Positions 27,765 to 41,517 of a stretch of DNA of 64,000 bases are shown here, piece after piece. Numbering within the stretch: position 1 is the stretch's first letter; each line of letters begins with the position of its first letter. The stretch is from Selaginella moellendorffii (Eukaryota; Plantae; Lycopodiophyta). Below the pieces are notes generated by a model that was given only the letters and a program-made list of their open reading frames with translations, made no database searches and was not told the origin of the DNA. Where the stretch lies: contig NW_003314261.1 of the NCBI RefSeq assembly GCF_000143415.4, forward strand, positions 6,790,817 to 6,854,816, written 5' to 3'. A program made the translations under genes and the position numbers.

Positions 27765-29915
27765 ATGGCGCTGTCCGTGTGTGAGGAGTACCGCGCGCTC
27801 GTCGACAAGGCCTACAACAAGTTCTCGCGGCTGCGAGATTTCCCTCCCTACGGCCAGAACAAGTGGGATTTCTACTTCCGCAAGGCATTCCAGGTGTACA
27901 CCAAGCTGTGGAAATTCCAGCAGGATAATCGCCAGAAGCTCGTCGAGGCAGGGCTCAAGCGCTGGGAGATTGGCGAGATTGCCTCTCGGATCGGGCAGCT
28001 CTACTACATCTACTATCTCCGCACGAGCGATGCTACTTTCGTGAAAGAGTCTTACATCTTCTACGAGGCCATTCTCAGCCGTGAGTATTTCAAGGAACCA
28101 GGCAAGGATATAACGCTCGCGAATAAGCAGCTCAGATACTTCGCTCGATTCATTGTCATATGTTTGCTACTTAACAGGTGGGATATGGTGAATCGCCTTG
28201 TCAGGCAACTCCATATCCTCGTCGAGGACTACTCGAGCTCTTTCCAGGTATCGATCATGGGGGAAAATACCTGAAAAGTTCCTTTTTTTTCTACTTACTT
28301 TTCGCTGTTCCTTACAGAATAGTGATGTCAAGGAATGGAAAACCGTCACGCAGGAGATTGTCCGTTTTCTAAAGGCCGATTCCTTGGCTGAGCTGAGCAG
28401 GCCTATTCGATACATCTCGGCTCTCGATGGTCAAGTTTCCTCCTTTCCTAGTGTCTCCAAGTTGGAGGGACACAAAGCTCTGAGGCTCAAGAATGCTGTT
28501 CTCGTGAGCTATTTCCATAATGAGGTACGTGGTTTGACTCCTTTTGCTGCGGCGGGATGGTGGTAACTTTAATGCTTTCTGGTGCCAGGTGAAGTTCAGC
28601 GAGCTGACACTGGACAACTTTAGAATGCTTCAATGTTTGGAATGGGAGCCTAGCGGGTCTTTCTATCGCATGAAGTCCGCGACGGATTCAAATGCTGGAG
28701 GGTTGCTTGCTCAGGATATAGCTGATCCGACTCTTCCTGCCAACCCTCACAAATACATTCTATATCGTCCCAACATTCACCAGCTGCTTATGGTAAGAAG
28801 TGATTTCTTTCGTGCGTGCGCTTCTTGCTTATGGTTTTTCTTGCAGGTTTTAGCTACTGCTTGTGAGGAAGTGCCTCCAGACTCTGCAGTATTGCTGTAT
28901 CTGTCAGCTGCAGGTACTCGAAATTTTCTTGTGTGACACATCAATTCGTGCTTCGATTGCTTTCCAGGAAGATCCCGTGCTGGTTCCCATGACAGGAGCG
29001 GTGTTTCTACTCAATTTTCAAAGGAGGCTTCAAGCACAGACTCATCCCCCGATCGCTCCGACGCTCTTTTAGAAGAGACTCCTGTTTCTGCCGGCAGTCC
29101 TAGGCGACGAGTTGATGGATCGACTGGCTTATCGCTTGGACGACGAGGAAGCAACGTCTATCCAGGCGACTTGCTTCCATTTACAAGGAGGCCGCTGTTT
29201 ATCATCGTCGACAGTGACGCTAGCAACATATTTGAGGTACCTCGCTTATGCTTTTTGGAAACAACATTACTCTGGTTTGTCACTCTTTGCAGTCCTTGTG
29301 CGGTGACGAAAGAGGCGAGCCAGTGGTGTTACTTCTTTCGCCAACCGCAAAGCCATACACGGCAAAGCACCCAGGTGCAGGCAGCACCTTCACCTTTTTC
29401 CTCACTGCGCCTTTGCAAGCCCTTTGCCAAATGACAAATGTGCGTGTCACTGAGCTCCAGCAGGTATGGAAGATTGAAAATGGTGTCAACATTTTTCCTT
29501 CCTTACGTTTTCCCTCTTCTTTTCCAGGGAAGTTACGAGCAGGCCGAAAAGATGGTGTCGAGCACACTACTGGAATTGGGAAACTTGCTGGCTTCTTCCG
29601 GTAGCCTCAACGTTGCCTGGGGACGTGTCTTGGGTGATCCATTCCTTCGTCAGCTCCTTTTCCGGTAAGTTTGTCACTTCGAGTTTTCTATCTTAGCTGA
29701 GAATCGCCGTCTCGCCTGCTAGATTCGTGTTTGCTCGCGCTTGCTACTCTTTGCATCGACTGTACGTAGGAAAGAGCGAGTATTATCCTCGATGCTTGCC
29801 GCCGCTACCAGAGGAGGTACTGCCAAGATCTAGAGTGGTAGAATTGAGCGTTTTACAGGTCGCGAGATTGTTGTGCGTCGCGGACCAATTTATTTTCTCG
29901 GAGAACGGCTCGTAA
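27765..29915 (+). CDS. SCAI: SCAI family protein, multi-exon
   Basis: FQVYTKLWKFQQDNRQKL, GLKRWEIGEIASRIGQLYY.YYLRTS, VKFSELTLDNFRMLQCLEWEP, NPHKYILYRP, PGDLLPFTRRPLFIIVDSD, FTFFLTAPLQA. Confidence 0.93.
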
Positions 29916-29959
29916 GAAGAAAAGTTGGATTGATGATCTCCGTCGTTGTGCGTCAACCT

Positions 29960-30500
29960 TTAAACAAGAAAGCCCTCGCTCCAAGGACAGTGGTAAGTTC
30001 TTCACGAAGGACAACTACATCATGCTGGCTCGCTCCACATACCGGAGGAGGAAGCTCTACCTTGAGAATCCTTTCCACAACGTGTAGGAAGAGATTCATT
30101 TCAAGTATTGGGATGACTGGTCCAGGGCTTGCATTTTCAACAACAGGATCGCGGTGTGCTGCTCACGTCCAACTTGACACCATGAGGATCGGTGGTTGAC
30201 AACAAGATTTTTTGAATGGACACGAGTCTGATTGAGTTTGATACCGCAACTAATTCTTTTCTCGTATTATGCCTTGCCCGAGGATGGCGAGGATATCTAC
30301 CTCGCCGCTTGGAAATCCAAGCTCTATGTAATGATGGTGATTACCAATTGTGGCGAGCGTAAGGTTCAGATCTTGGTGACCAGGCTTGCGGGCGGGTATC
30401 TGATAATTACGACATCGAGTTCATTGGTCAAGATGGGAACTACCTGAATTTTTGTGGGGAGGATGTCTACTTGCTTCTCTTTTGACATGGATGCCGGGAC
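29960..30500 (+). pseudogene. Possible F-box-associated domain remnant
   Basis: Frameshift-broken segments LIEFDTATNSF and YYALPEDGEDIYLAAWKSKLYV resemble plant F-box-associated strands; stops present. Confidence 0.25.
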
Positions 30501-30882
30501 TTGAGACAAAAACATCGACACCTCTGCAGATACATCTGTCACTTGATTGATATACACTTTTTAATTTTACTTTGCAACTACATTGCTTTGCTTGACTCGA
30601 CTCAATTCAATATTTGATGTCTCAGGTTGCTCGGGGCTTCTTTCGAGGCCTTGAAGCACTATGTGGACGTCTATAGTCTTAAAACCTCGTTGCTTTAGGA
30701 GCATTGGTTTGAAGGCATTACGGGCAGCGGTAGGGCAAACTTCTAGCCTATTTCAACAAATGCTATGCAAAATTCCGTTTCTCGTAAACATGTTTGATGT
30801 TTGGAGCTTTACGAAGTCGTGGATTCTCCAAGGGAATTTAGCCATGGGATCAACATCTATTAAATACCACACCGAAACATAT

Positions 30883-32084
30883 TTAAAGAGCGCATCCAGA
30901 GGTAGTACATCTGTTCCATATAGGGCAGCAAATAGGCTTGGACTTCGGAGGGCAGCACGCAAAGTTTGGTTTGAACGAAATAAAGCTGCAGCTAATCCTC
31001 TTGGAGCACGGAACTGGGGGTGATGGCGGTGGTCGAGGAGGCGGCGGTGGCGGAGATGGTGGTGGCGGTGGTACCTTCGCTTTGACAGGAAAGTAGACGA
31101 AGCCATTCACTCCGCATCGACCCAGTGGCAGGCCATGGTTTCCACGCTGCAGCCTCATGTAGCCTTTCTCTCCCCAGCTTGTCCCCGCCGAGTTTTTGAT
31201 GATCCAGTAGTCCTGGCCGTTTTCGGATCCATATCCGACGATGAGCACTGCTAGATACGGAGTTGCCTGGTCGTCTTTGCACGGGCCCTTGTAAATCCCC
31301 TGCATTTTTAGTTCAAAGGCTTCAGCGAGTTGTCCTTCACAAAAGATAAAATGACTTTTCTCATACCCCTTTGTAGCTAAGGAACTCCGGCGCATTGCCA
31401 TCGATTAGAGCTGTCACGGGTTGCTTGGCAACCTGCTTGACGATGTCAGTGTCGTCGCTGGAGCTGTAGAAATTGTCGTAATTGTCAATGCCTACGGAGT
31501 TGCGGTTCTGGAAGAGCACAACTTTTAGTAAAAAACAATGGAAACAGGAGAGCACGCACGCACTTACGTGTTTTCGGCAGGTGCCATTGAATCCTGTGAA
31601 GGGGTAATCCGATGCGGTGGAGAGGCCATTCCCTGTGTCGACGACGTACTCAAATGCGTTCTGGGGAAACCCGCTGTGGCAGCCATCGGTGCCGTAGCTC
31701 CGGGAGCAATCCAGCAGCTGCTGCGCCGACAGCTCCACCAACACTCCAGTCGCAATCTTGTTGATTCCCTCGATGGCTTCTGCCGCCGCGAATGCCCAGC
31801 TGCCATCTGTAACATGATTTTAAATCCAAACCACAGGCTAAAACATAAATAGAGAGAAAAACCGACTTACTCTGGCATCCTTTACGATCTTTCACAGGTG
31901 TGACGGCTCCCAAAGTTCTCCAGTCAATGGATTTGGGAGGGTCAGAGCCGACGTCGCCAAACATTCTGATGCCTGCATCACCATCCAGATTACTATCACT
32001 TGTGATAGTACTCCGAAGGGCGGCATTTGCATTTGCAGCAAGCAGGAGGAAGAACGAAATCGAGACCAAGGGATGAGGAGACAT
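30883..32084 (-). CDS. Secreted papain-like (C1A) pseudo-protease with a Pro-rich linker and Cys-rich tail
   Basis: Signal peptide, [57 protein letters not shown]. Exons 32084-31871, 31806-31568, 31507-31367, 31299-30883. Confidence 0.88.
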
Positions 32085-32399
32085 TCTTAGACAGTCGTTG
32101 AAGCACGAGAACGAAGGGCTATAAAAGCATTTCACAACACCCCACGAGGACCATGCGGCTGAACACTTCGTCCATCGTACAACACTTTTGACAGGCTTTT
32201 GTTAGGGCAAAAAAACGTGCAAATGAATGAGGCTCTTTGCCAATGACTCACCACCAGCAGCCGTAAAACCGTGCGCGGATGGTTGTATGCGGCTGCATAT
32301 AACCAGGCATTGTCCAGGTGCCAGCATTGCATTGGCTGAATCGAGGTCTATGCACGTACATGATTAGATATTCCTAGAATATCATCTATGACTAATGGC

Positions 32400-35300
32400 A
32401 TGTTCATGACCCCATACTATGATTCATTTCATGGCCATCATGCGCCAATATGAAAGGTCATGCAAGAAGGATTTAGTCACCCTTTTTATGAATCCAATTC
32501 ATGGATTTTTACCCAAATTATCCACCTTTTCATTTGTTAAGCTCACAATCTCATAACAAAATAGAAGACTAGAGAGAAAATTAATCAAGACAAGTCTGGA
32601 GTGATCAAATTATAGACAAATTGTAGGATAACATATAGACGGTTTTGTGTGTTTGGTTAATTGGACACTTGCATACAATCATCTATATACAGGAGGGTTT
32701 TACACCCACCATTAACTTAGAATTTTTACATTAGAAGATTTTAAAATTTTAATGTTATTCTTTTCACATCAATACTACATTTTTGTAATAAAAACTTTAG
32801 ATAATGCCAATAAGTTAGTCAATTTAATAATACTTTGTTCACACCAGCCATTAAATTATACTTAAAAGTGATTTAGAAACACATCTCTCAGAAATGTTGA
32901 GCATGTGATAGAAGAGAGGATTCCACAAACAAGGAATCAAAATTTCCCTTGTGTGAGAGGGAGAGAAGCCATGGATCGCGAAGCAAGAACTTCCTTGATC
33001 ACTGGCACTGCAAAAACAAAGATCTCTATAGAAGAGGAGGGAACACAGTCTTGGGTTTTAAGTATTTTCAAAATGCCAGTGGCGCCAACATGTTCTAGGG
33101 CCGCCTTGTTCTCAACACTTTGGACGGCCGATTCAAGCCAGTAGTGGCAGCAGCAGCGGTAGCAAAAGGTGGCAGCAATCACGAAGATCTTGGCTCCAGC
33201 CACCCCCATCCGCATCAATCTCCCTTGCCCTCTTCGCACCACCTCCTCTATCTCCCCCCTCCTCGAAAGCGGCAGCGGCAGAGGAGAGGAGTGCCACGGC
33301 GGCAATGACGATGATAGGAGGAGCTTCCACGGTGGCAGCGATGGCGTCAAGCGGCACGGCAGAGCTGAGCAATGCTCTGGAATCTGGTGTTGGGCACAAG
33401 TGCAAGAGCCCCGACGAGCCTAAGAGACTTCTCTAGTGGGGGCAGCGGCAGAGGCAGCGGAATGGGCGTGTCGTGGAAGTGACCAAGGGAGGAGGAAGAG
33501 GCGGCACTTGTGGTCACAGCACCATCACAGCTCTGCCAACAACACTGCCACCAATCACCACCACCACCACCAACACCACCACGAGGAGTCGTCACAGAAG
33601 ATGGCAATCCATGCAAATCGGAGGGTTGTGCGTGTGGAGAAGTAGTAGCAGCACGGCAGCGCTTGAATCTAGCCCAAGTGGTGCCCTATAGAATATTTAT
33701 GGAATTTAATCTTAATGCTACAAAAGTGTAGCATTAGGATTTTAGTGAAAAATGCAAAAGAAATGTTAATTGTAACATTAGCTTACTTTAATGTTTATTT
33801 CTGGTGTGAACAAGTTACCATTAAATTTAGCTATTAGATTAGAGTTTCAAAATCTAATATAATAGTGTGGTGGTGTGAATGAATTACCATTAAATTTCCT
33901 TCTTTAACATTTTTCCTTCCATTCCTTTGTTCCTCTTTTGAAAAAATGGTGTTAAAAAGTATTGGCTTCATGGAACATGGGTGCTCCAAGTTCAAAATTC
34001 TATAATTGAGCATCAAGTGTGTTTGCTATTCTTTGTGTTTATTATTTATGTGTTCCTTTTATTTTAAGGACAAATGTTCTTGATATCCTAGAATATGTTA
34101 GAAAGTGCTTACTTTAAAAGATTTAAACAATCATCATCTTTCTATATTTAAAAGAGCAAGTGCAACATATTTAATCTAGAAATTTTTTTCTTGGGTGGTT
34201 GAGATGGAAAAGAAGTTATAGCAGCAGAAGGTATATTTTCAACAATAGCATTGTTATTATTACTATTGTAATTCTTGAAATGTAAAAGGAAATATTTTCT
34301 TAGTAACACTAGTGCATTTATAACTATAGTGTGATTATTGTTTTTTAGCCAAGTATTTTCAGCTCTTTCTTTTTATTCAATTTTTAACTAAGGAGGTAAT
34401 TCTCTCCTAAGGATGCCAAGCACTAGAGTCTCTTACTACTAATGAAAAACATTTTATGAGCCATGTTTTGGCCCTTTTTGGTGTCTTGGATTGTCTTGGA
34501 GAATATGGTTATATATTTCATGAAAGAAATCTAAATCCTTGAAGTAAGACATTTTTTTTGTATTTGTTAAGCTCCAAAGAAAGTATTCCCCTTCTAAATA
34601 TGAAAGTCTTCATAAGGATAAAAGGTTTAGGCTTTATATTTATAATCTTTCTTCTTAAGAAACTTTCTACTCTAGTATAAGTATCTATCAAACATCTTTA
34701 GTGGAATTAGGGTGTTATCTAAAAAATGCTATAAGTTGCTAAACAAGTCAAGACATTTTATGTCGCGAATGTGACTGTGGATATCGAAAGTTATTTGTCA
34801 ATTAGTTCTTTTGGATATTCTTTCCTTACTGCCACGACAGCAAGAAATTGGTATTGCTAAATCTTTTATTAATCTCCACTTAAGCTAGTTGAGAAACTAA
34901 TCAATGGCCGTGTACTTAAATTGAATAAACATAGGGTAGGAACTCTCATATATTTCTTGCTAAGCATATTTAACCTAGTTTGAGAAACTCTTGTCATTGA
35001 TTTGCATTTGTTAGTGTTGGGAACCCCTGTGATATTGAATTTGGTCCTTCAATATTTACTAAATGATAGCTTACCATGTTTGTCAAACACCCTTGTTATC
35101 ATACACCTTATGTTAGCAGCATTCGGTTTCAATTGTTATTTATAAAAAGTGTGTAGATTTGCTAATTTGGCATATCTATAGAATATAAAGATTGTCTTAA
35201 ATACAATGGTGTTTATCCCATATCCAAATTCGCAATCTAACACCATTCTATATTTAATAAGTTTCAAATTTGTCGTAAAGACTAACTTCTTATACTAAGG

Positions 35301-38300
35301 GTGAAAGATTAAAGCATGTGTTCCTAGGGGGAGGGTGGGGGGGAGTTGCAAGGGGTTCCAAACGTATAGTAGGGATAATAGGTTAGGCATAGTTGATCAA
35401 CCTAAAGCATAGTTTAACTTTAATTTCTGTACCTATCTCTGTTTTGCATTTAATTTAGGTCTAAGTCTAAATTCCACACCATGCTAACTAATGGAATACC
35501 CATATCCTCACAATAGGGCATTAATATGTTGAAATAATGTTACTCCATTTGTTTTTATTTTGTATGTTGGTCTTGGCATTAGGATGTTGGTCACTCTAAG
35601 ATTGTTTTAAGTCGTTCTGTGCTTTTATCCCTTCACTCTTTAGGCTAAATGTTCAAGAGTCACTTCATGTGCCAATTTCTTCACTCCTTGGTTACAAGCT
35701 TAGAAGTTTGGCTCTATTTCTTCATTTAATGGCCCAAGGCATTAAAACTTGGGTTTTGTATCATTGTCTTTAGATATATGGTTATTTTTCATACTAGATT
35801 ATATAAACTTTCGCTTGGGCTCATAAAATAGATGTTAAATGTTCTATTTAATGTTAGCTTATCAGTGGTTTTATAAGTTATTCTATACCATAGGTTAAAG
35901 TAAATCTCCCCTAGGTTTGCTATGAGTGGCGAATAAACTAGTTTGTAGCTATTTAGCACGACAGTAGTGAATCCTTCCTATACATGATTAAGTGAATCAA
36001 TCAAGACTATAATGATTAATTTATTAATTCAAATAGTCATTGCCGCATTCTCTTATAAACTTTTCTTGGATTGGATTAAAGGCAGTGCAAATGCAAGTTG
36101 GAGGTTTAATCAAAGTTGAGTTTGAAAAGAGAGTCATTAGGGACAAAGGATTAAACACGTAAAATATCTTCTCTTCCTCAAGAGATGATTTGCAATGAGG
36201 TGTTAATTTATTACTTATGTTCACATCATATAATCAAGAATCCTTATCTTAATGAATGTTAGTTATGATGGTCTTACAAATGGTGAGTTGTGGGATGAAG
36301 AGTGGTGAAATGCTAAATTATTTTGTCTATGCTTGCTATTAAAGATTACAATGTTTAATTTTTTTTTGGGGAACCTTGTTATTACTCTTTGAATAGTTTG
36401 GTGTTGGATTAGTATTGAGTTTTAGTTAAAAAGAGAGTGGCATAAACTTGTCTATGTTGTGAATAAAAGTTAATGGTGTTGAGTGTTGTAAATCTCTATT
36501 AATGGGGTATGGCATTTATGTTGTATTTTGTTGAATCGAGTTGGCACTTGATACTCACATAAACATTTATAGTAATGATATAGATATTACTCATGTTGTT
36601 GTTCAATTGATAATCAAGTCATTGTATATATATCATATATATGTGGTCATAAGTAATGTGTTTATGAAGTTGCTTTATCAAATGATGATCAACCATAAAG
36701 TGGAGTTTATTTGTATATAGTAGCATTGAAGTAGCTTTAACTAAGTTCTCAATGATGACCCATTATACTAAGCTTAAGTTGGTACTTTGTTTCCTTGAAA
36801 ATTTGTAAAGTGATGGAAAAAGTTGTTCCATTCATTTGCGATAGTTTATTGGTTGATCTGTTAGCACTTGGAGTAGATTGTCAGATGGAAAAAGTGTGAA
36901 ATTAAGGCATTGACATTGTTAGCACTTGTGTTAATAAAAGTGACATTATTATTTTGAGTGATAAAGAATTTTCTTTAAACCTTGATTTTTTATGTCATTT
37001 TTTTAATTAGTGTTTTATCTTCATATTAGATTTTGAAGGTGATTGAAGAAGAGTGTTAATGCAATGTGGATATCCAAAGATATGGTCTTCGTGATTGAGT
37101 CTTGGGTATTTATTTACATTTTTGCAGATATTGATGTTGGCAGAAATTTGGGCATAATATTCAATACTTAAGCATATAGAATTTATTTTGAAGTGAAAAT
37201 TTGTGAAGTTGTTGGTAAGAGGAAGTTAGTTGAAATTTTGTATTTCTAAATTAGGAGTCATTCTTTCTTTAGGATAGAAAATTTTCCACAAATTTTTTTA
37301 GACTATTCCAATGGTTAGTATGCTGGTCAGTTTACTTGTAAACCATTCCATTTTCATAAGTCATTACACATTAGTGAAAGGGTTGAAGTTAACTTCGGTT
37401 AACTTAAACTTTAATATATAGTTTGTATGATGTAACCTAAAAGTGATGTTAACTTTTGGGGCTAAAGGCAATTGAGTTAAATAGAGTCTAGAGTTAGTGT
37501 AAAAAAGTGATTGTTGCACTTTTTTTAAAAAGGTAACTCTTGTACCTTTCTTTTGTAGTATTATGTTTAATAGTAGATTGCACTTTACATTTTTTTTAAA
37601 ATTTTATGAGAGTAGTGAGTTTTTGCTGATTTTAATTTGGTCTTGGTAGCCTTGCACCTTGGTTGAGGACAATGATATCCAACTTAATTGTTTGCAATTG
37701 AAATGTATTTAAATTATATGCCCTATAAGGTTATAAAAGTCATAGGTACCAATGAAAAATTCTTATTTTTATATATAATTATCTCTTGCCACAATACTCC
37801 CTCTATAATGGTTGTAAATCATTTCTATTTTCCTTGCATTGAGGCTTTTATATAATAAAGATGCTCTAGGATCAAATTCCTAAAAGGAAAAATGGGATAA
37901 AGTCTATGAAATTGAATAAAAAAAGTTATAAACATTTCCAAGTAAATTCAAGTAGTCCACTCATACCCAATGTATTTATTTATTTATTCTTTTTTATAGT
38001 AACACTATTAGCAAGTGAATTTCTATATATCAAAAGTATATATAAATTTCAATGATGTTTTTAAAGAAATACATCTATACTAGGTATATTTAAATCCTTG
38101 CTCTCTCTCTCTTCATTTCATTTCATGGAATAAAGTGCTAAAGTAAATAAAGTATAGTTAAGAATTTTATAGGATTGGATTGAAGAGCATTTTTACTTAA
38201 TCAAAGTAAGTATTTTTTATTTTTATTTTCTTTTTTTTTATCTCATCTTTTATAGGTTTTAAAATTTTTTTAGTATTTTTCTTTATCACTTATAGATTAT

Positions 38301-39620
38301 CTAGATGAAGTGTCAAGAAAATGTCAATAATAATTAACACATATGTACATGTATGTTTTATATAGATTTGAAAGATGGTTTTCATTTGAAACACTTTTTC
38401 ATCCCATTAAAACATCTTTAAAGACTTGTTTATATTTTAATTAATTCCTTGGTGGTATAATATTTATAACAATAAAGCAATAAAGGGAGGCCCATAGTAG
38501 ATTTCATGGACATTGTTATTAAATTTTTTTTATAGATGTTATATTTGGTTAATAGCAAATTTGGCACATATAGGAGTGGCCTCCCAACTCTAGCACATTC
38601 TATCTTTAAATCCTCCAAGCCTTTTCTTGGTTTACAATTTTATATACACTTAACCTTATATAACTACCTTTATGCATTTCCATCTCTTCCTACTAAACAT
38701 TAGTGGATTTTATTCAAATTTGTTTTGTGTTGTTATTAGCAGTTTTGGTGTTGAAGTCCACCAAGCAACATAATGTGTGTATAGTGGACCCCATTGCTGT
38801 GGCCTTACTATTATTAAAACCATTCCAATAAGATAATTGACTTGTTTTTTCATTTAAGCAATCATCTTTTATTTTTCAAAGTCACAAGAGTTTTAGATCC
38901 TTTTGTATATATGGAGAGAAATCTCAAAATTGTGTCATTAGTCATATTCAATATAATTCAAAAGCATTATAAGCTCTATAATGGCTTTGTCATTTAAAAG
39001 TTAATAAATACCTATGAGTTCCATTATACTATAGATCTATGGGAAACTTTAATGTTCTATAGGTATTAGTAAGTTTTGAGATGTATAGGAAGATGTTGTT
39101 TTAAAGTAGTATACTAATTTGTTAAGAAGAAGTACTTTGCAACATTATTACTAAAATAAAGATAAATAATATATTTTTTCATGCACATAATCAAATACTA
39201 ATGCAAGTGGCACTGATTTGAATTTTGCTATATATATACATGTGTGTGTGTGTCTGTGTGTGGTATGCACTAATGCAAGATTATTTTGTGAGTTACACAT
39301 GTCTGTTTAAACAATTCAATAATAAAACACATATGTGTTTTAAATTGATGTGATTGCAGTATAATTCAATCTTTTGCCACACCACCCACCCCATCCCTAT
39401 CATTGTGATATATATGTGGAATAGATAGAGATGAACAAATTTGTGAGATATGACACAATGTAGAGTAGACATAGTCAGGTGTGATATAATCAATTTTGGA
39501 ATATAAAATTTTACTATTCTAGTGCCGGCAAGGAGAGGCCTGCTTGTTGTTTCTTGTAGTGACGCAACCAAAATATTAAAATAGAACTTGGATAGATAAA
39601 CCAATAGTGAACCCAAAATA
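32400..39620. mobile_element. ~7 kb AT-rich, CG-depleted, gene-free block, probably a decayed transposon or other insertion
   Basis: Abrupt composition shift, very few CG dinucleotides and almost no ORFs over 60 aa in 34-39 kb, in a locus otherwise packed with genes. No termini or transposase motifs recognised. Confidence 0.4.
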
Positions 39621-39638
39621 ATGCATGAGAGAGATTAG

Positions 39639-39838
39639 CAACAAACAAATTTTACTGTGCTGCTGGCATATACTCTTTGCACTTGTATTTTGTTATCGCA
39701 ATTCACAACAAACAAAGTCTACTGTGCTACTGGCATATACTCTTTGCACTTGTATTTTATCATCATAATTCACAACAAACAAATTTTACTGTGCTGCTGG
39801 CATATACTCTTTGCACATGTATTTTGTCATCGTAATTC
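39639..39838. repeat. 3 x 67-bp tandem repeat
   Basis: Unit CAACAAACAAATTTTACTGTGCTGCTGGCATATACTCTTTGCACTTGTATTTTGTTATCGCAATTCA starts at 39639, 39706 and 39773. Confidence 0.95.
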
Positions 39839-39919
39839 CAAGCCATTGTGGAAACACTAACTTGATACGCAGCTCTCAAACCTCCAGCCCAAGTTTCTTT
39901 TGCTCTGTGTCTGTCAGCA

Positions 39920-41517
39920 ATGGCTCAGACCCCAAATCCAGAATCCCCATTGCTCAAGCTTCCCCGCTTCTTCTCTCTCAAAGCCGACAATGGTAAGTAC
40001 CTCATGCTTAAGTCCGATGGCACCCTTGCATTCGAGTCCGACACCACCACCCGATACACCACACACGAGGCGGTCTACAATGCCAATGATTCCAACGCCT
40101 CCTTCGTCATTTGCTCCGCCAACAAGCACTTCTGGCGCCGCCACTCCTCCACCTCTGCTGTGGTAGCCGACCTCAAGAACCCACCCAGCGACACCGATGC
40201 CTCAAACCGGTTCAAGCTCCAGCCCGAGGTCGCCCCAGGAAAGGTGGCACTCTCCTCCGTCCAAGACGGTCTCTTCCTCAAGCGCTTCAACACCCAGTAC
40301 CACGCGTTGCTCAAGGAGCCCAATGAGATCGTTTCCATGGTAGAAGTGGTGGAGTCGTCCTACTACGTTGTCAACATGCCCGAGTACGTGGGTCTCAAAG
40401 GTAACAATGCCAAGTACCTCAGCTGCCTCTCCGAGCCTATGGGCATTGGAGGCTTCCCGGACCAGTTCGCTTTCACAAACGAATCCGCGGATATTCGTGT
40501 TACCACCCACCAGGTACACTGCTGGTTTCGTCTTTCATCTGTTTTCACATTCCCAGGCCCCTCGACCAGGTGGCGTATCTCCTGAACGGCAAGATATCTC
40601 TTCGATCCAACCAAGCCGCCTCCTGGACTTCAAACAATTACTGGAAGGCCGATACAGACAAGTGGGTCGCACCTAGAGGTGACACTCCCGACTACGCTGA
40701 ATGCCAGTTCGATCCAGTCCGAGTGAACAGCACCACACTCGCTCTCAAGGGTCCCAATGGCCTCTACCTTATGCGTGGAAGCCGATCCTGGGTCACCAAT
40801 AATCCGGACGTGGTCTTTGCTGGGGCATCCGATTACGAGGAAACGTCCAGCCACCTGGTGGTCGAAGAAGCTGTGAGGAGCAGGCAAATCTTTAACGTGA
40901 CGTATCTGCTAGATCTGGCGAGTGCGAGCGAGGAGGCGCCAATCGGTGTCGCCTATGGATCTGCCACGAACAGAGGCAGCGGGCCTGCTGAGATGGAGAT
41001 CAGCGTGAGCAAGACCACCACAGTGAGCAACACCAGGTCCTTCCACAACTCGTTCACCTTCTCCGAGAGCATCACGCAGACTTTGACGCTCGGTGTGCCG
41101 TTCTTTGCCAACGAGAGCACCGAGATCCAGATCGGAGCCGAGCAAGAGTTTGGAAACCAGTGGGACGAGACTTTGTCCGAGGAAGTCACTTATCAGACGA
41201 CTTACAAAGTGACGATTCCTCCAGGGAAAACGGTACGTAAGAGAATCTGCCTGTGCGCCTTTGCTCGATTGATTGACTGACATCCTCTGCTATCCATCCA
41301 GGGAACTGTGCAGGTTGTGATCAGCACTGCGAAACTGGCCATCCCGTTCCACTACAAGACGAGGGACACATCGCTCAATGGCGTGGAGCGTGAGCCTGTG
41401 GATCGCATCGACGGTGTCTTTGATGGCGTGCTGGCTTTCAGGACTGATGCGGACATATATGACGGCACCCAGACATATCGCATCCCTGTTCCCATGAAGC
41501 TCAACGTTGCGAAATAG
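39920..41517 (+). CDS. Amaranthin/agglutinin lectin + aerolysin-type pore-forming protein (Hfr-2-like)
   Basis: Two agglutinin-like repeats (LPRFFSLKADNGKYL; MPEYVGLKGNNAKYL) followed by SRQIFNVTYLLD, Ser/Thr-rich alternating beta strands, VTIPPGKT and IPFHYKTRD..DGVFDGV. No signal peptide. Exons 39920-40513, 40570-41232, 41302-41517. Confidence 0.85.

What the first reader, a model, noticed from the sequence alone, without database searches (positions are those of the whole stretch)
30883..32084. Prodomain-less, catalytically dead papain: candidate secreted decoy or ligand-binding pseudoenzyme
Seen: after splicing, the active-site segment reads [14 protein letters not shown] (canonical VKDQGxCGSCWAF), so the oxyanion Gln is Arg and the catalytic Cys is Ser. 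The His segment reads [11 protein letters not shown] (canonical xHAVLxVGYG), and KNSWG has become KNSAG. The signal peptide leads almost directly into the mature domain, with no I29/ERFNIN propeptide. The ORF, splice sites and several structural Cys remain intact. Known: C1A proteases need the Cys-His dyad and an inhibitory prodomain, apoplastic ones are targets of pathogen inhibitors, and soybean P34 is a precedent for a non-catalytic papain. Inference: coordinated loss with an intact frame suggests selection for a non-enzymatic role such as inhibitor decoy or receptor.
Basis: partly seen in the sequence, partly recalled or inferred. Interest (0 to 1): 0.82.

Follow-up and report, generated by a model that had tools for sequence, protein, structure and literature searches.

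The report
Expressed dead papain-like protein, Selaginella
This spikemoss (Selaginella moellendorffii) gene makes a secreted protein that keeps the papain protease fold but has lost its catalytic residues and its prodomain. It is transcribed, conserved by selection and belongs to a small family of similar "dead proteases", so it most likely binds something rather than cutting it.

Summary
Window 32084..30883 (minus strand) is a four-exon gene. Its 336-aa product is identical to RefSeq XP_024525532.1, "zingipain-1" of Selaginella moellendorffii.

- **Protein:** it has a signal-peptide-like start, no I29 prodomain and a papain (C1A) domain. In that domain Gln19 is Arg, Cys25 is Ser, His159 is Leu and Trp177 is Ala. 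All six structural Cys are kept. A Pro-rich linker and a Cys-rich tail follow.
- **Expression:** all three introns are spliced out in transcriptome contigs from four studies. Some of these contigs are specific to this locus. No upstream exon is seen.
- **Family:** the gene is one of four loci, each present on both haplotypes. All eight copies are intact and carry the same dead motifs.
- **Selection:** between loci the C1 domain has dN/dS 0.15-0.26 (Fisher p 1e-4 to 1e-8). It is not a decaying pseudogene.
- **Wider clade:** these loci sit in a well-supported (100/99) S. moellendorffii clade of dead papain-like proteins. Two members keep the prodomain and one is fused to a LamG domain. The clade derives from RD21/XBCP3-like proteases and shares intron positions and its own conserved substitutions.

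The non-enzymatic reading is supported. The specific decoy or receptor role is untested, and the heavily remodelled cleft argues against a faithful inhibitor decoy. Dead plant C1A proteins are already known (P34, SPE31, Hordeum pseudopeptidases), so this is a new variant of a known kind.

The parts
30883..32084 (-). Whole CDS (start codon to stop codon) of the dead papain-like gene; product 336 aa = XP_024525532.1 'zingipain-1' of Selaginella moellendorffii
   Evidence: Spliced model; identical to P0270.
31871..32084 (-). Exon 1: start codon, signal-peptide-like segment (residues 1-21, 32084-32022), a 30-aa linker, and the start of the mature domain up to Cys70. It holds the Arg67 codon (31886-31884) in place of oxyanion-hole Gln19.
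   Evidence: The locus-specific RNA contig X1 record 7 covers 31871-32049 without mismatch.
31807..31870 (-). Intron 1 (64 nt, phase 1, GT..AG), two codons before the dead nucleophile
   Evidence: Joint 31806/31871 in contigs of three runs. P0003, P0010 and P0284 have an intron at the same position and phase.
31568..31806 (-). Exon 2: GSWAF active-site helix with Ser74 (AGC, 31801-31799) in place of Cys25, the N72-G-S74 sequon, and Cys105, Cys114 and Cys148
   Evidence: Pfam PF00112, E 3e-21; aligned to the CWAF motif of ficin and actinidin; coordinates.
31508..31567 (-). Intron 2 (60 nt, phase 0)
   Evidence: Joint 31507/31568 in all four runs. X4 record 19 spans it with no mismatch and carries locus-specific bases.
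31367..31507 (-). Exon 3: middle of the C1 domain (QPVTALIDG segment)
31300..31366 (-). Intron 3 (67 nt, phase 0)
   Evidence: Joint 31298/31366 in X4 and X5; X1 shows it as 31297/31366.
31078..31299 (-). Exon 4, C1-domain part: Leu214 (CTA, 31254-31252) in place of His159, Asn234 kept, Ala236 (31188-31186) in place of Trp177, and Cys205 and Cys260
   Evidence: Pfam PF00112, E 9e-18; aligned to the HAV motif of ficin.
31015..31071 (-). Pro-rich linker (residues 275-293) with Ser-Pro(n) runs, in the place where RD21-type proteases carry their Pro-rich linker
   Evidence: same architecture in P0151, P0277 and P0284.
30886..31014 (-). Cys-rich tail (8 Cys, pattern C-x5-C-x10-CC-x7-CC-x5-C-x4-C) with low model confidence; possibly a shrunken granulin, not shown
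   Evidence: The Cys pattern is conserved in three of four loci. Pfam finds nothing, and a granulin HMM is not significant. pLDDT is below 50.
30782..30882 (-). 3' UTR, at least 100 nt
   Evidence: RNA contigs X3 record 9 (30782-31138) and X1 record 3 (30827-31050, no mismatch).
32119..32126 (-). TATA-like TTTTATAG, 35-42 nt upstream of the ATG; about 100 nt of upstream sequence is conserved with the paralogues
   Evidence: Read from the sequence; blastn similarity to loci B and C extends to 32185. Inference only.

Best explanation
This is a functional, non-catalytic papain-fold protein (a pseudoprotease).

**Origin.** An RD21/XBCP3-type papain-like cysteine protease in the Selaginella lineage lost its oxyanion Gln, nucleophile Cys and general-base His. 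It also gained a one-residue insertion after Cys22. The dead gene was then kept and diversified. In the branch that leads to this gene, the I29 prodomain was removed by an in-frame deletion inside exon 1, which left the signal peptide joined to the mature domain. The branch then expanded to four loci.

**Protein.** It enters the secretory pathway and folds into a three-disulfide papain domain. Without a nucleophile/base pair it cannot cleave peptide bonds.

**Proposed action (inferred).** It acts by binding. The remodelled but still hydrophobic cleft holds a ligand without turning it over. Cleft positions are named by rough anchoring to papain numbering: Phe118, Pro119, Leu185, Ala215 and Phe265 lie at S2-pocket positions. 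The Pro-rich, extensin-like linker and the disulfide-rich tail tether or present the domain outside the cell.

**Shown:** gene structure, loss of catalytic residues and prodomain, transcription and splicing, purifying selection, family and clade membership.

**Inferred:** secretion, extracellular location, binding through the cleft, and the identity of the ligand (unknown).
For: - **Gene and motifs:**
- **Fold:** the AlphaFold2 model has pLDDT above 90 over most of residues 50-250 and pTM 0.72. Foldseek gives target-normalised TM-scores of 0.87-0.92 to EP-B2, actinidin and cathepsin S. It also hits 2b1m, a papain-fold seed protein without the catalytic Cys.
- **Transcription:** three GT..AG introns are removed in contigs of four runs from four studies. 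Mismatch-free contigs carry locus-specific bases.
- **No upstream exon:** there is no contig coverage at 32116-35200 and no prodomain remnant in the window.
- **Selection:** Nei-Gojobori dN/dS is 0.25-0.39 for the whole CDS between loci. It is 0.15-0.26 in the C1 domain, Fisher p 1e-4 to 1e-8, and 0.32-0.46 in the tail.
- **Copies:** all eight are intact, with identical dead motifs and structural Cys.
- **Clade:** nine S. moellendorffii dead proteins form one clade at 100/99 support. It includes the prodomain-bearing P0010 and P0284 and the LamG-fused P0003. Intron positions and phases are identical, and the prodomain lies within exon 1.
- **Clade-specific conserved residues** at positions near-invariant in 50 active relatives: the insertion after Cys22, Pro119, Thr183, Ala184, Asp187, Glu242, Arg259 and Val266. 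This is what a new constraint predicts, not decay.
Against: - No protein-level or binding data exist, and no ligand is known.
- Secretion rests on reading the N-terminus by eye; no predictor was run.
- RNA contigs stop at 32049. The first 35 nt of the CDS, ATG included, are therefore not directly seen in RNA. The break does lie next to the only allelic SNP in that stretch, at 32051.
- The runs are labelled RNA only by guess. The spliced joints are what argue for RNA.
- dS is lower in the domain (0.13-0.21) than in the tail (0.47-1.0). Gene conversion between loci may have homogenised the domain and could distort pairwise dN/dS.
- No orthologue outside S. moellendorffii was found. Long-term conservation therefore rests on paralogues of one species.
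- C1A prodomains are generally held to be needed for folding (established knowledge). Whether a prodomain-less member folds is untested.
Confidence: 0.8

Rival explanations
1. It is an inhibitor decoy or sponge. The dead domain mimics active apoplastic papain-like proteases and soaks up pathogen-secreted inhibitors or endogenous cystatins, or it is itself monitored by an immune receptor.
For: It has a secretory-type N-terminus and an intact fold and disulfides. It belongs to a multi-copy, moderately fast-evolving family: whole-CDS dN/dS is 0.25-0.39 and variable patches sit on the domain surface. The same idea has been proposed for expressed Hordeum C1A pseudopeptidases (PMC13520124).
Against: The surface that inhibitors contact is strongly altered at positions invariant in 50 active relatives: Gln19Arg, an insertion after Cys22, Gly65Ser, a three-residue insertion before position 159, and Trp177Ala. 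An N-G-S sequon sits on the active-site loop. These altered residues are fixed across all eight copies rather than tracking active paralogues. No binding data exist.
Confidence: 0.15
2. It is an abundant storage or vacuolar protein of the soybean P34 / SPE31 type: a papain-fold protein kept as a stable, protease-resistant nitrogen store or elicitor-binding protein.
For: P34 is a papain-family protein that has no enzymatic function because the catalytic Cys is absent, and it makes up 2-3% of total soybean protein (PMC2292165). SPE31 (2b1m) is among the structural and sequence matches. Locus-specific contigs reach a depth of about 1000 in run X4, against 62 for the neighbouring gene. Contig depth is a poor measure of expression.
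Against: P34 is made with a pre- and pro-region that is later removed; this protein has none. The Pro-rich linker and Cys-rich tail point to an extracellular or wall context rather than a vacuolar store. No vacuolar sorting signal was looked for. No phylogenetic tie to the legume proteins was tested.
Confidence: 0.1
3. It is still an enzyme with a different chemistry, for example Ser74 acting as nucleophile as in silicateins, or a non-proteolytic activity.
For: Cys to Ser is the most conservative replacement and is kept in all eight copies and in P0003. Asn175 is kept.
Against: The general base His159 is Leu and the oxyanion Gln19 is Arg in every copy. Sister lineages carry Gly or Thr at the nucleophile position, so no nucleophile is conserved across the clade.
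Confidence: 0.04
4. It is a young, decaying pseudogene or a mis-modelled gene whose true transcript has a prodomain and catalytic residues.
For: Older JGI models of these loci were partial and chose another splice site, reading GCQSNWAF. The 5' end of the mRNA is not directly observed.
Against: There are eight intact copies. C1-domain dN/dS is 0.15-0.26, with p down to 1e-8. The spliced junctions in RNA match the model. There is no RNA coverage for 3 kb upstream and no prodomain-like sequence in the 64-kb window. The RefSeq model is identical.
Confidence: 0.02

Closest known systems
RD21 / XBCP3-type plant papain-like cysteine proteases (C1A, with Pro-rich linker and granulin domain)
   Same: These are the closest active relatives, at 41-48% identity. 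The dead clade sits with these two groups in the tree at 83/86 support. The fold, the three disulfides and a Pro-rich linker after the protease domain are shared.
   Different: There is no I29 prodomain. Gln19, Cys25, His159 and Trp177 are replaced and a residue is inserted after Cys22. The tail is a 41-aa Cys-rich stub that does not score as granulin.
Soybean P34 (Gly m Bd 30K) and Pachyrhizus SPE31 (PDB 2b1m): papain-fold seed proteins without the catalytic Cys
   Same: Both are plant C1A homologues that have lost the nucleophile yet are made and kept as proteins (PMC2292165; 2b1m title). SPE31 matches exon 4 at E 3.8e-16.
   Different: P34 is synthesised with a pre- and pro-region. From my own knowledge, its replacement residue is Gly. 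Here His159 and Gln19 are also lost, the prodomain is absent from the gene, and a Pro-rich/Cys-rich tail is present. Descent from a common dead ancestor was not tested and is not suggested by the trees.
Expressed C1A pseudopeptidases of wild Hordeum (PMC13520124)
   Same: This is a multi-copy plant C1A family in which most copies have lost the catalytic configuration, Cys to Ser included. The copies are transcribed, fold in AlphaFold models and are proposed to act as binding or decoy proteins.
   Different: The Hordeum family is a recent, horizontally acquired grass family with mixed active and dead copies. The Selaginella clade is uniformly dead, more divergent internally (branch lengths 0.3-1.5 per site), and includes prodomain-less and LamG-fused members.
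Prosopis / Neltuma 'zingipain-2-like' dead C1A proteins (P0196, P0297) and Logan contig L007
   Same: Cys25 (to His) and His159 (to Leu) are both lost, and the LSAQQL motif replaces LSEQEL.
   Different: They keep the prodomain and Gln19. They join the Selaginella clade only as a flagged long-branch pairing. Without Selaginella they fall inside an angiosperm RD21 group at 99 support. An independent origin is therefore more likely.

Membership tests
Peptidase C1A (papain family, Pfam PF00112) | Sequence and fold homology to the papain domain | tested here: met
   PF00112 hits on all four exon pieces, best E 3e-21 and 9e-18. Foldseek target-normalised TM-scores about 0.9 to EP-B2, actinidin and cathepsin S.
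Peptidase C1A (papain family, Pfam PF00112) | Catalytic Cys25 | tested here: not met
   Ser74 (AGC) aligns with Cys25. 50 of 50 active relatives have Cys.
Peptidase C1A (papain family, Pfam PF00112) | Catalytic His159 | tested here: not met
   Leu214 aligns with His159. 50 of 50 active relatives have His.
Peptidase C1A (papain family, Pfam PF00112) | Oxyanion-hole Gln19 | tested here: not met
   Arg67. 50 of 50 active relatives have Gln.
Peptidase C1A (papain family, Pfam PF00112) | Asn175 of the triad | tested here: met
   Asn234 is kept in all dead and active sequences.
Peptidase C1A (papain family, Pfam PF00112) | Three conserved disulfides (Cys22-63, 56-95, 153-200) | tested here: met
   Cys70, 114, 105, 148, 205 and 260 are present and invariant in the alignment. 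Bond formation itself is not testable here.
Peptidase C1A (papain family, Pfam PF00112) | N-terminal I29 / ERFNIN inhibitory prodomain | tested here: not met
   No PF08246 hit. Only 30 residues separate the signal-like segment from the mature N-terminus. No remnant in the window. No upstream exon in RNA.
RD21-type granulin-bearing PLCPs | C-terminal granulin domain (PF00396) after a Pro-rich linker | tested here: not met
   The Pro-rich linker is present. The tail has no Pfam hit at E up to 10. It scores about 0 bits against an HMM built from 26 RD21-type tails.
RD21-type granulin-bearing PLCPs | Phylogenetic placement inside the subfamily | tested here: inconclusive
   The dead clade groups with the RD21-like and XBCP3-like groups at 83/86, as an unresolved three-way split. 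No lycophyte active proteases were in the tree.
Selaginella dead-PLCP clade (defined here) | One-residue insertion after Cys22, loss of Gln19, Cys25 and His159, shared introns (phases 1, 0, 0), monophyly | tested here: met
   100/99; 100.
P34 / SPE31-type non-catalytic papain-fold proteins | Common descent with the legume proteins | not tested
   Only similarity to SPE31 was seen. P34 and SPE31 sequences were not in the trees.
Hydroxyproline-rich glycoprotein chimeras (extensin-like motif) | Ser-Pro(3+) motifs that are hydroxylated and O-glycosylated | not testable with these tools
   Ser followed by six Pro, and a further Ser-Pro-Pro, are present in residues 275-293. The modification cannot be inferred from sequence alone.

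The most novel reading that the evidence does not exclude
The Selaginella dead clade may be a so far undescribed class of extracellular papain-fold binding modules that no longer need a prodomain to fold. On this reading the former active-site cleft has been rebuilt into a dedicated ligand site, through a clade-wide insertion after Cys22, new conserved residues, and an N-glycosylation sequon on the active-site loop in three of four lineages. The module has been combined with different presentation domains (Cys-rich tail, LamG). It would work, for example, as a wall-anchored sensor or receptor-like partner in lycophyte immunity or wall remodelling.
Probability: 0.2. Interest if true: 0.7.

Novelty: new variant of a known kind. 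Interest (0 to 1): 0.5.

Why it matters
Pseudoenzymes derived from papain-like proteases are known in plants, but few have evidence of constraint. This case offers a compact natural experiment.

One clade in one genome contains dead members with a prodomain, without a prodomain, with a Cys-rich tail, and with a LamG fusion. All derive from one loss of catalysis. That makes two questions testable. Can a C1A domain fold without its prodomain once it no longer needs to be inhibited? What does a conserved, rebuilt protease cleft bind?

It also corrects an annotation. At least eleven distinct RefSeq proteins of S. moellendorffii seen here are named as active proteases (zingipain, mexicain, cysteine proteinase 7) but cannot be cysteine proteases.

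Tried and rejected
- **Paralogue in the window:** tblastn of the product found none in the 64 kb.
- **Prodomain remnants or upstream exons:** tblastn with five prodomains gave only chance-level hits. RNA contigs give no coverage at 32116-35200.
- **Tail as granulin:** Pfam finds nothing at E up to 10. A purpose-built granulin HMM gives about 0-3 bits with high bias. Only the tail of P0284 resembles the N-terminal half of granulin by eye. The granulin label is not adopted.
- **Variants in the RNA contigs as alleles:** I first read them this way (pN/pS about 0.11). One search showed they are the bases of paralogous loci B, C and D. They are not independent of the paralogue dN/dS, and I withdrew that figure as separate evidence.
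- **Other apparent dead relatives:** apparent His-to-Leu relatives in Sphagnum and in metagenomes (P0294, P0085) were alignment shifts; both have His.
- **A vascular-plant-wide dead clade (Selaginella plus Prosopis):** rejected as long-branch attraction.
- **Orthologues in other species:** an exhaustive phmmer search of exon 4 against 1.84 billion representatives and two word-index searches found the dead signature with the insertion only in S. moellendorffii. Other Selaginella genomes may simply be missing from these libraries.
- **Literature:** searches by locus tags and accession returned nothing.
- **Bacterial promoter/terminator scan:** not applicable to a plant gene.
- **Operators' limits:** Read laying was given 5801 letters.
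Full report
**1. Observation**

The finding lies on the minus strand. Joining four exons at canonical GT..AG sites gives an open 1011-nt CDS of 336 aa. The exons are 32084-31871, 31806-31568, 31507-31367 and 31299-30883. The introns are 64, 60 and 67 nt.

The product is identical, residue for residue, to XP_024525532.1, "zingipain-1 [Selaginella moellendorffii]" (P0270). This names the organism and shows that RefSeq has the same model.

Pfam finds Peptidase_C1 on all four exon pieces and no I29 domain. phmmer against PDB aligns the S of GSWAF with Cys25 of ficin and actinidin, and the L of LAVL with His159.

In a 58-sequence alignment, 50 active relatives are invariant at four positions where this protein differs:

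| Papain position | Active relatives | This protein |
|---|---|---|
| Gln19 | Gln | Arg67 |
| Cys25 | Cys | Ser74 |
| His159 | His | Leu214 |
| Trp177 | Trp | Ala236 |

Asn175 and all six disulfide Cys are kept. The N-terminus has a hydrophobic core followed by A-N-A, then 30 residues, then the mature start (PPKSIDWR). After the domain come a Pro-rich stretch and a 41-aa tail with eight Cys.

**2. Expression and gene model**

Twenty public runs from nine studies hold part of the stretch. I laid the contigs of four runs from four studies on window 29400-35200.

- All three introns are skipped with CT..AC ends on the plus strand, which is GT..AG on the gene's strand. Intron 2 is skipped in all four runs, introns 1 and 3 in three each.
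- Spliced contigs show that the material is RNA, although the runs are labelled RNA only by guess.
- There is no coverage from 32116 to 35200, so no upstream prodomain exon is joined on.
- Coverage continues to 30782, giving a 3' UTR of at least 100 nt.

The "other letters" in these contigs are the bases of paralogous loci, not alleles. The paralogues are therefore transcribed too. Several mismatch-free contigs carry bases unique to this locus: X1 30827-31050, X4 30929-31043, X4 31391-31507 joined to 31568-31700, and X1 31871-32049. This very copy is therefore expressed and spliced as modelled.

Contigs stop at 32049 in three runs. The only difference between the two alleles in the first 80 nt of the CDS is at 32051. 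The stop is therefore best explained as a branch in the assembly graph and not as the transcript start. Even so, the ATG at 32084 is not directly seen in RNA. A TATA-like TTTTATAG lies at 32126-32119.

**3. A family, not a lone gene**

The exhaustive search with exon 4 found very few close relatives. Word-index searches and cluster look-ups added the rest. The close relatives are all from S. moellendorffii. Fetching their loci shows four loci, each present on both assembled haplotypes.

| Locus | Proteins (the two haplotypes) | Notes |
|---|---|---|
| A | P0270 (this gene) / P0267 | P0267 lies on GL377622.1; flanks are 98.4% identical |
| B | P0002 / P0271 | 273 aa, ends in the Pro-rich region |
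| C | P0151 / P0268 | 4 kb from locus B |
| D | P0277 / P0275 | on another scaffold |

All eight copies have intact frames, the same three introns, identical [25 protein letters not shown] and KNSAG motifs, and all structural Cys. Three of the four loci keep the Cys pattern of the tail.

**4. Selection**

Nei-Gojobori dN/dS between loci is 0.25-0.39 over the whole CDS, at dS 0.18-0.30. Split by region:

| Region | dN/dS between loci | Fisher p |
|---|---|---|
| C1 domain | 0.15-0.26 | 1e-4 to 1e-8 |
| Tail | 0.32-0.46 | 0.04 to 7e-4 |
| Signal + linker | 0.4-0.7 | not significant |

The dead residues are shared by all copies. This constraint therefore acted after catalysis was lost.

One caveat applies. 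dS is lower in the domain (0.13-0.21) than in the tail (0.47-1.0), and some patches are shared between non-allelic copies. Gene conversion may be at work.

**5. A deeper dead clade**

S. moellendorffii has three further dead relatives.

| Protein | Prodomain | Position 19 / 25 / 159 | Extra features |
|---|---|---|---|
| P0003 | none | Leu / Ser / Leu | C-terminal LamG domain |
| P0010 | I29 present | Val / Gly / Thr | none |
| P0284 | I29 present | Val / Thr / Leu | Pro-rich linker and Cys-rich tail |

In a maximum-likelihood tree of the C1 domain (48 rows), all nine Selaginella dead proteins form one clade at 100/99 support. The clade sits next to the RD21-like and XBCP3-like groups at 83/86. 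It stays intact at 100 when the Prosopis rows are removed.

Intron positions and phases (1, 0, 0) are identical in all four lineages. In P0010 and P0284 the prodomain lies inside exon 1. The prodomain of this gene was therefore lost by an in-exon, in-frame deletion that kept the signal peptide.

The clade has its own signature at positions near-invariant in the 50 active proteases:
- a one-residue insertion after Cys22;
- Gly65 replaced;
- Pro119, Thr183, Ala184, Asp187, Glu242, Arg259 and Val266 in all eight dead sequences aligned;
- Gln120 and Leu185 in seven of the eight (P0284 differs).

New residues conserved across long branches (0.3-1.5 changes per site) indicate a new constraint rather than decay.

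**6. Structure**

AlphaFold2 with the 58-row alignment gives pLDDT above 90 for most of residues 50-250 and pTM 0.72. The linker and the tail fall below 50. Foldseek finds papain-like proteases at target-normalised TM-scores of 0.87-0.92 and rmsd about 2 Å. Among them is 2b1m, "a papain-fold protein without the catalytic cysteine". I could not inspect the model coordinates, so the statements about the cleft come from alignment only.

**7. How it most likely works**

Shown: it cannot use the Cys-His dyad, yet it is made and constrained.

Inferred: it is secreted and acts by binding. The residues at S2-pocket positions are hydrophobic and fixed: Phe118, Pro119, Leu185, Ala215 and Phe265. These positions are named by rough anchoring to papain numbering. 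The S1/S1' side is rebuilt. The partner modules in the clade (Pro-rich linker with Ser-Pro runs, Cys-rich tail, LamG) are typical extracellular tethering or binding parts.

An N-X-S/T sequon sits on the loop just before the dead nucleophile in three of the four lineages. Here it is N72-G-S74, in which the former nucleophile position supplies the Ser. None of the 50 active relatives forms a sequon at these loop positions. A glycan at the cleft entrance is possible but untested.

The extent of cleft remodelling, fixed in all copies, argues against a faithful inhibitor decoy. I rate that reading at about 0.15. I rate a P34-like storage role at about 0.1, residual enzymatic chemistry at about 0.04, and pseudogene or mis-model at about 0.02.

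**8. Comparison with what is known**

Dead plant C1A proteins are established.
- Soybean P34 has no enzymatic function because the catalytic Cys is absent, and it is made with a pre- and pro-region (PMC2292165).
- SPE31 is the papain-fold seed protein of PDB 2b1m.
- Hordeum has a recently described expressed pseudopeptidase family that includes Cys-to-Ser copies, for which binding or decoy roles were proposed (PMC13520124).

The Selaginella case differs in four ways. It has lost Gln19, Cys25 and His159 together. It has shed the prodomain in two lineages. It forms a uniformly dead, internally old clade. It carries different C-terminal modules.

A Prosopis/Neltuma pair and an unidentified Logan contig carry Cys25-to-His and His159-to-Leu. 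They join the Selaginella clade only as a flagged long-branch pairing. They fall inside an angiosperm RD21 group when Selaginella is left out. I take them as an independent loss.

I found no paper on these Selaginella genes.

**9. Verdict**

The specific role is open. It is a new variant of a known kind, of moderate interest (0.5). Earlier scan notes only hinted that the genome is a plant.

Noticed in passing
L001:1685-1891 (same as L002:5620-5826), upstream of locus B on GL377565.1: A solitary copy of exon 1 only, 87% identical to window 32095-31871, lies about 200 nt before the P0002 gene. It looks like a relic of a partial duplication.
   Followed up: no
L009:5001-6606 (P0003, GL377582.1): A sister dead papain-like gene has no prodomain and carries a C-terminal Laminin_G_3 (LamG/ConA-like) domain. 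It is annotated 'cysteine proteinase 7'. I know of no described example of this domain combination.
   Followed up: partly
P0196, P0297 (Prosopis cineraria, Neltuma alba) and L007:1643-3047 (Logan contig of SRR30940501): These are prodomain-bearing C1A proteins with Cys25 replaced by His (ESHWAF) and His159 by Leu, and with LSAQQL in place of LSEQEL. They appear to be an independent dead lineage inside angiosperm RD21-type proteases.
   Followed up: partly
window 31871-31799 (residues 72-74) and the equivalent loop in P0003 and P0010: An N-glycosylation sequon sits on the active-site loop in three of the four dead lineages: N-G-S here, N-C-S in P0003 and N-C-T in P0010. The last two are created by the clade-specific inserted residue. 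None of the 50 active relatives forms a sequon at these loop positions.
   Followed up: partly
window 30883-31299 compared with 31367-31934 (paralogue comparisons): Synonymous divergence between loci is three to five times higher in the tail (0.47-1.0) than in the C1 domain (0.13-0.19). Non-allelic copies P0267 and P0271 share a distinctive patch (…SDGC…AYLDDTRNG). This suggests gene conversion among loci, or misalignment of the Pro-rich repeat.
   Followed up: no
window 34000-40000: This is an AT-rich block (GC 29-32% against about 50% elsewhere) just upstream of the gene. The two haplotypes are only 94-96% identical and broken by indels from about 30234 to 38023, against 98.4% on the other side of the gene.
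   Followed up: no
window 29400-30250, plus strand: A convergent neighbour gene is expressed and spliced (joints 29460/29525 and 29663/29722). On the other haplotype it is called as an SCAI-family protein (PF12070). Its 3' end lies about 530 nt from the 3' end of the papain-like gene.
   Followed up: no
P0001 (Vigna mungo WVZ15005.1, 873 aa): This gene model contains about eight tandem copies of the last C1A exon (DHGV..VGYG..KNSWG). It is either an exon-amplified locus or an annotation artefact.
   Followed up: no
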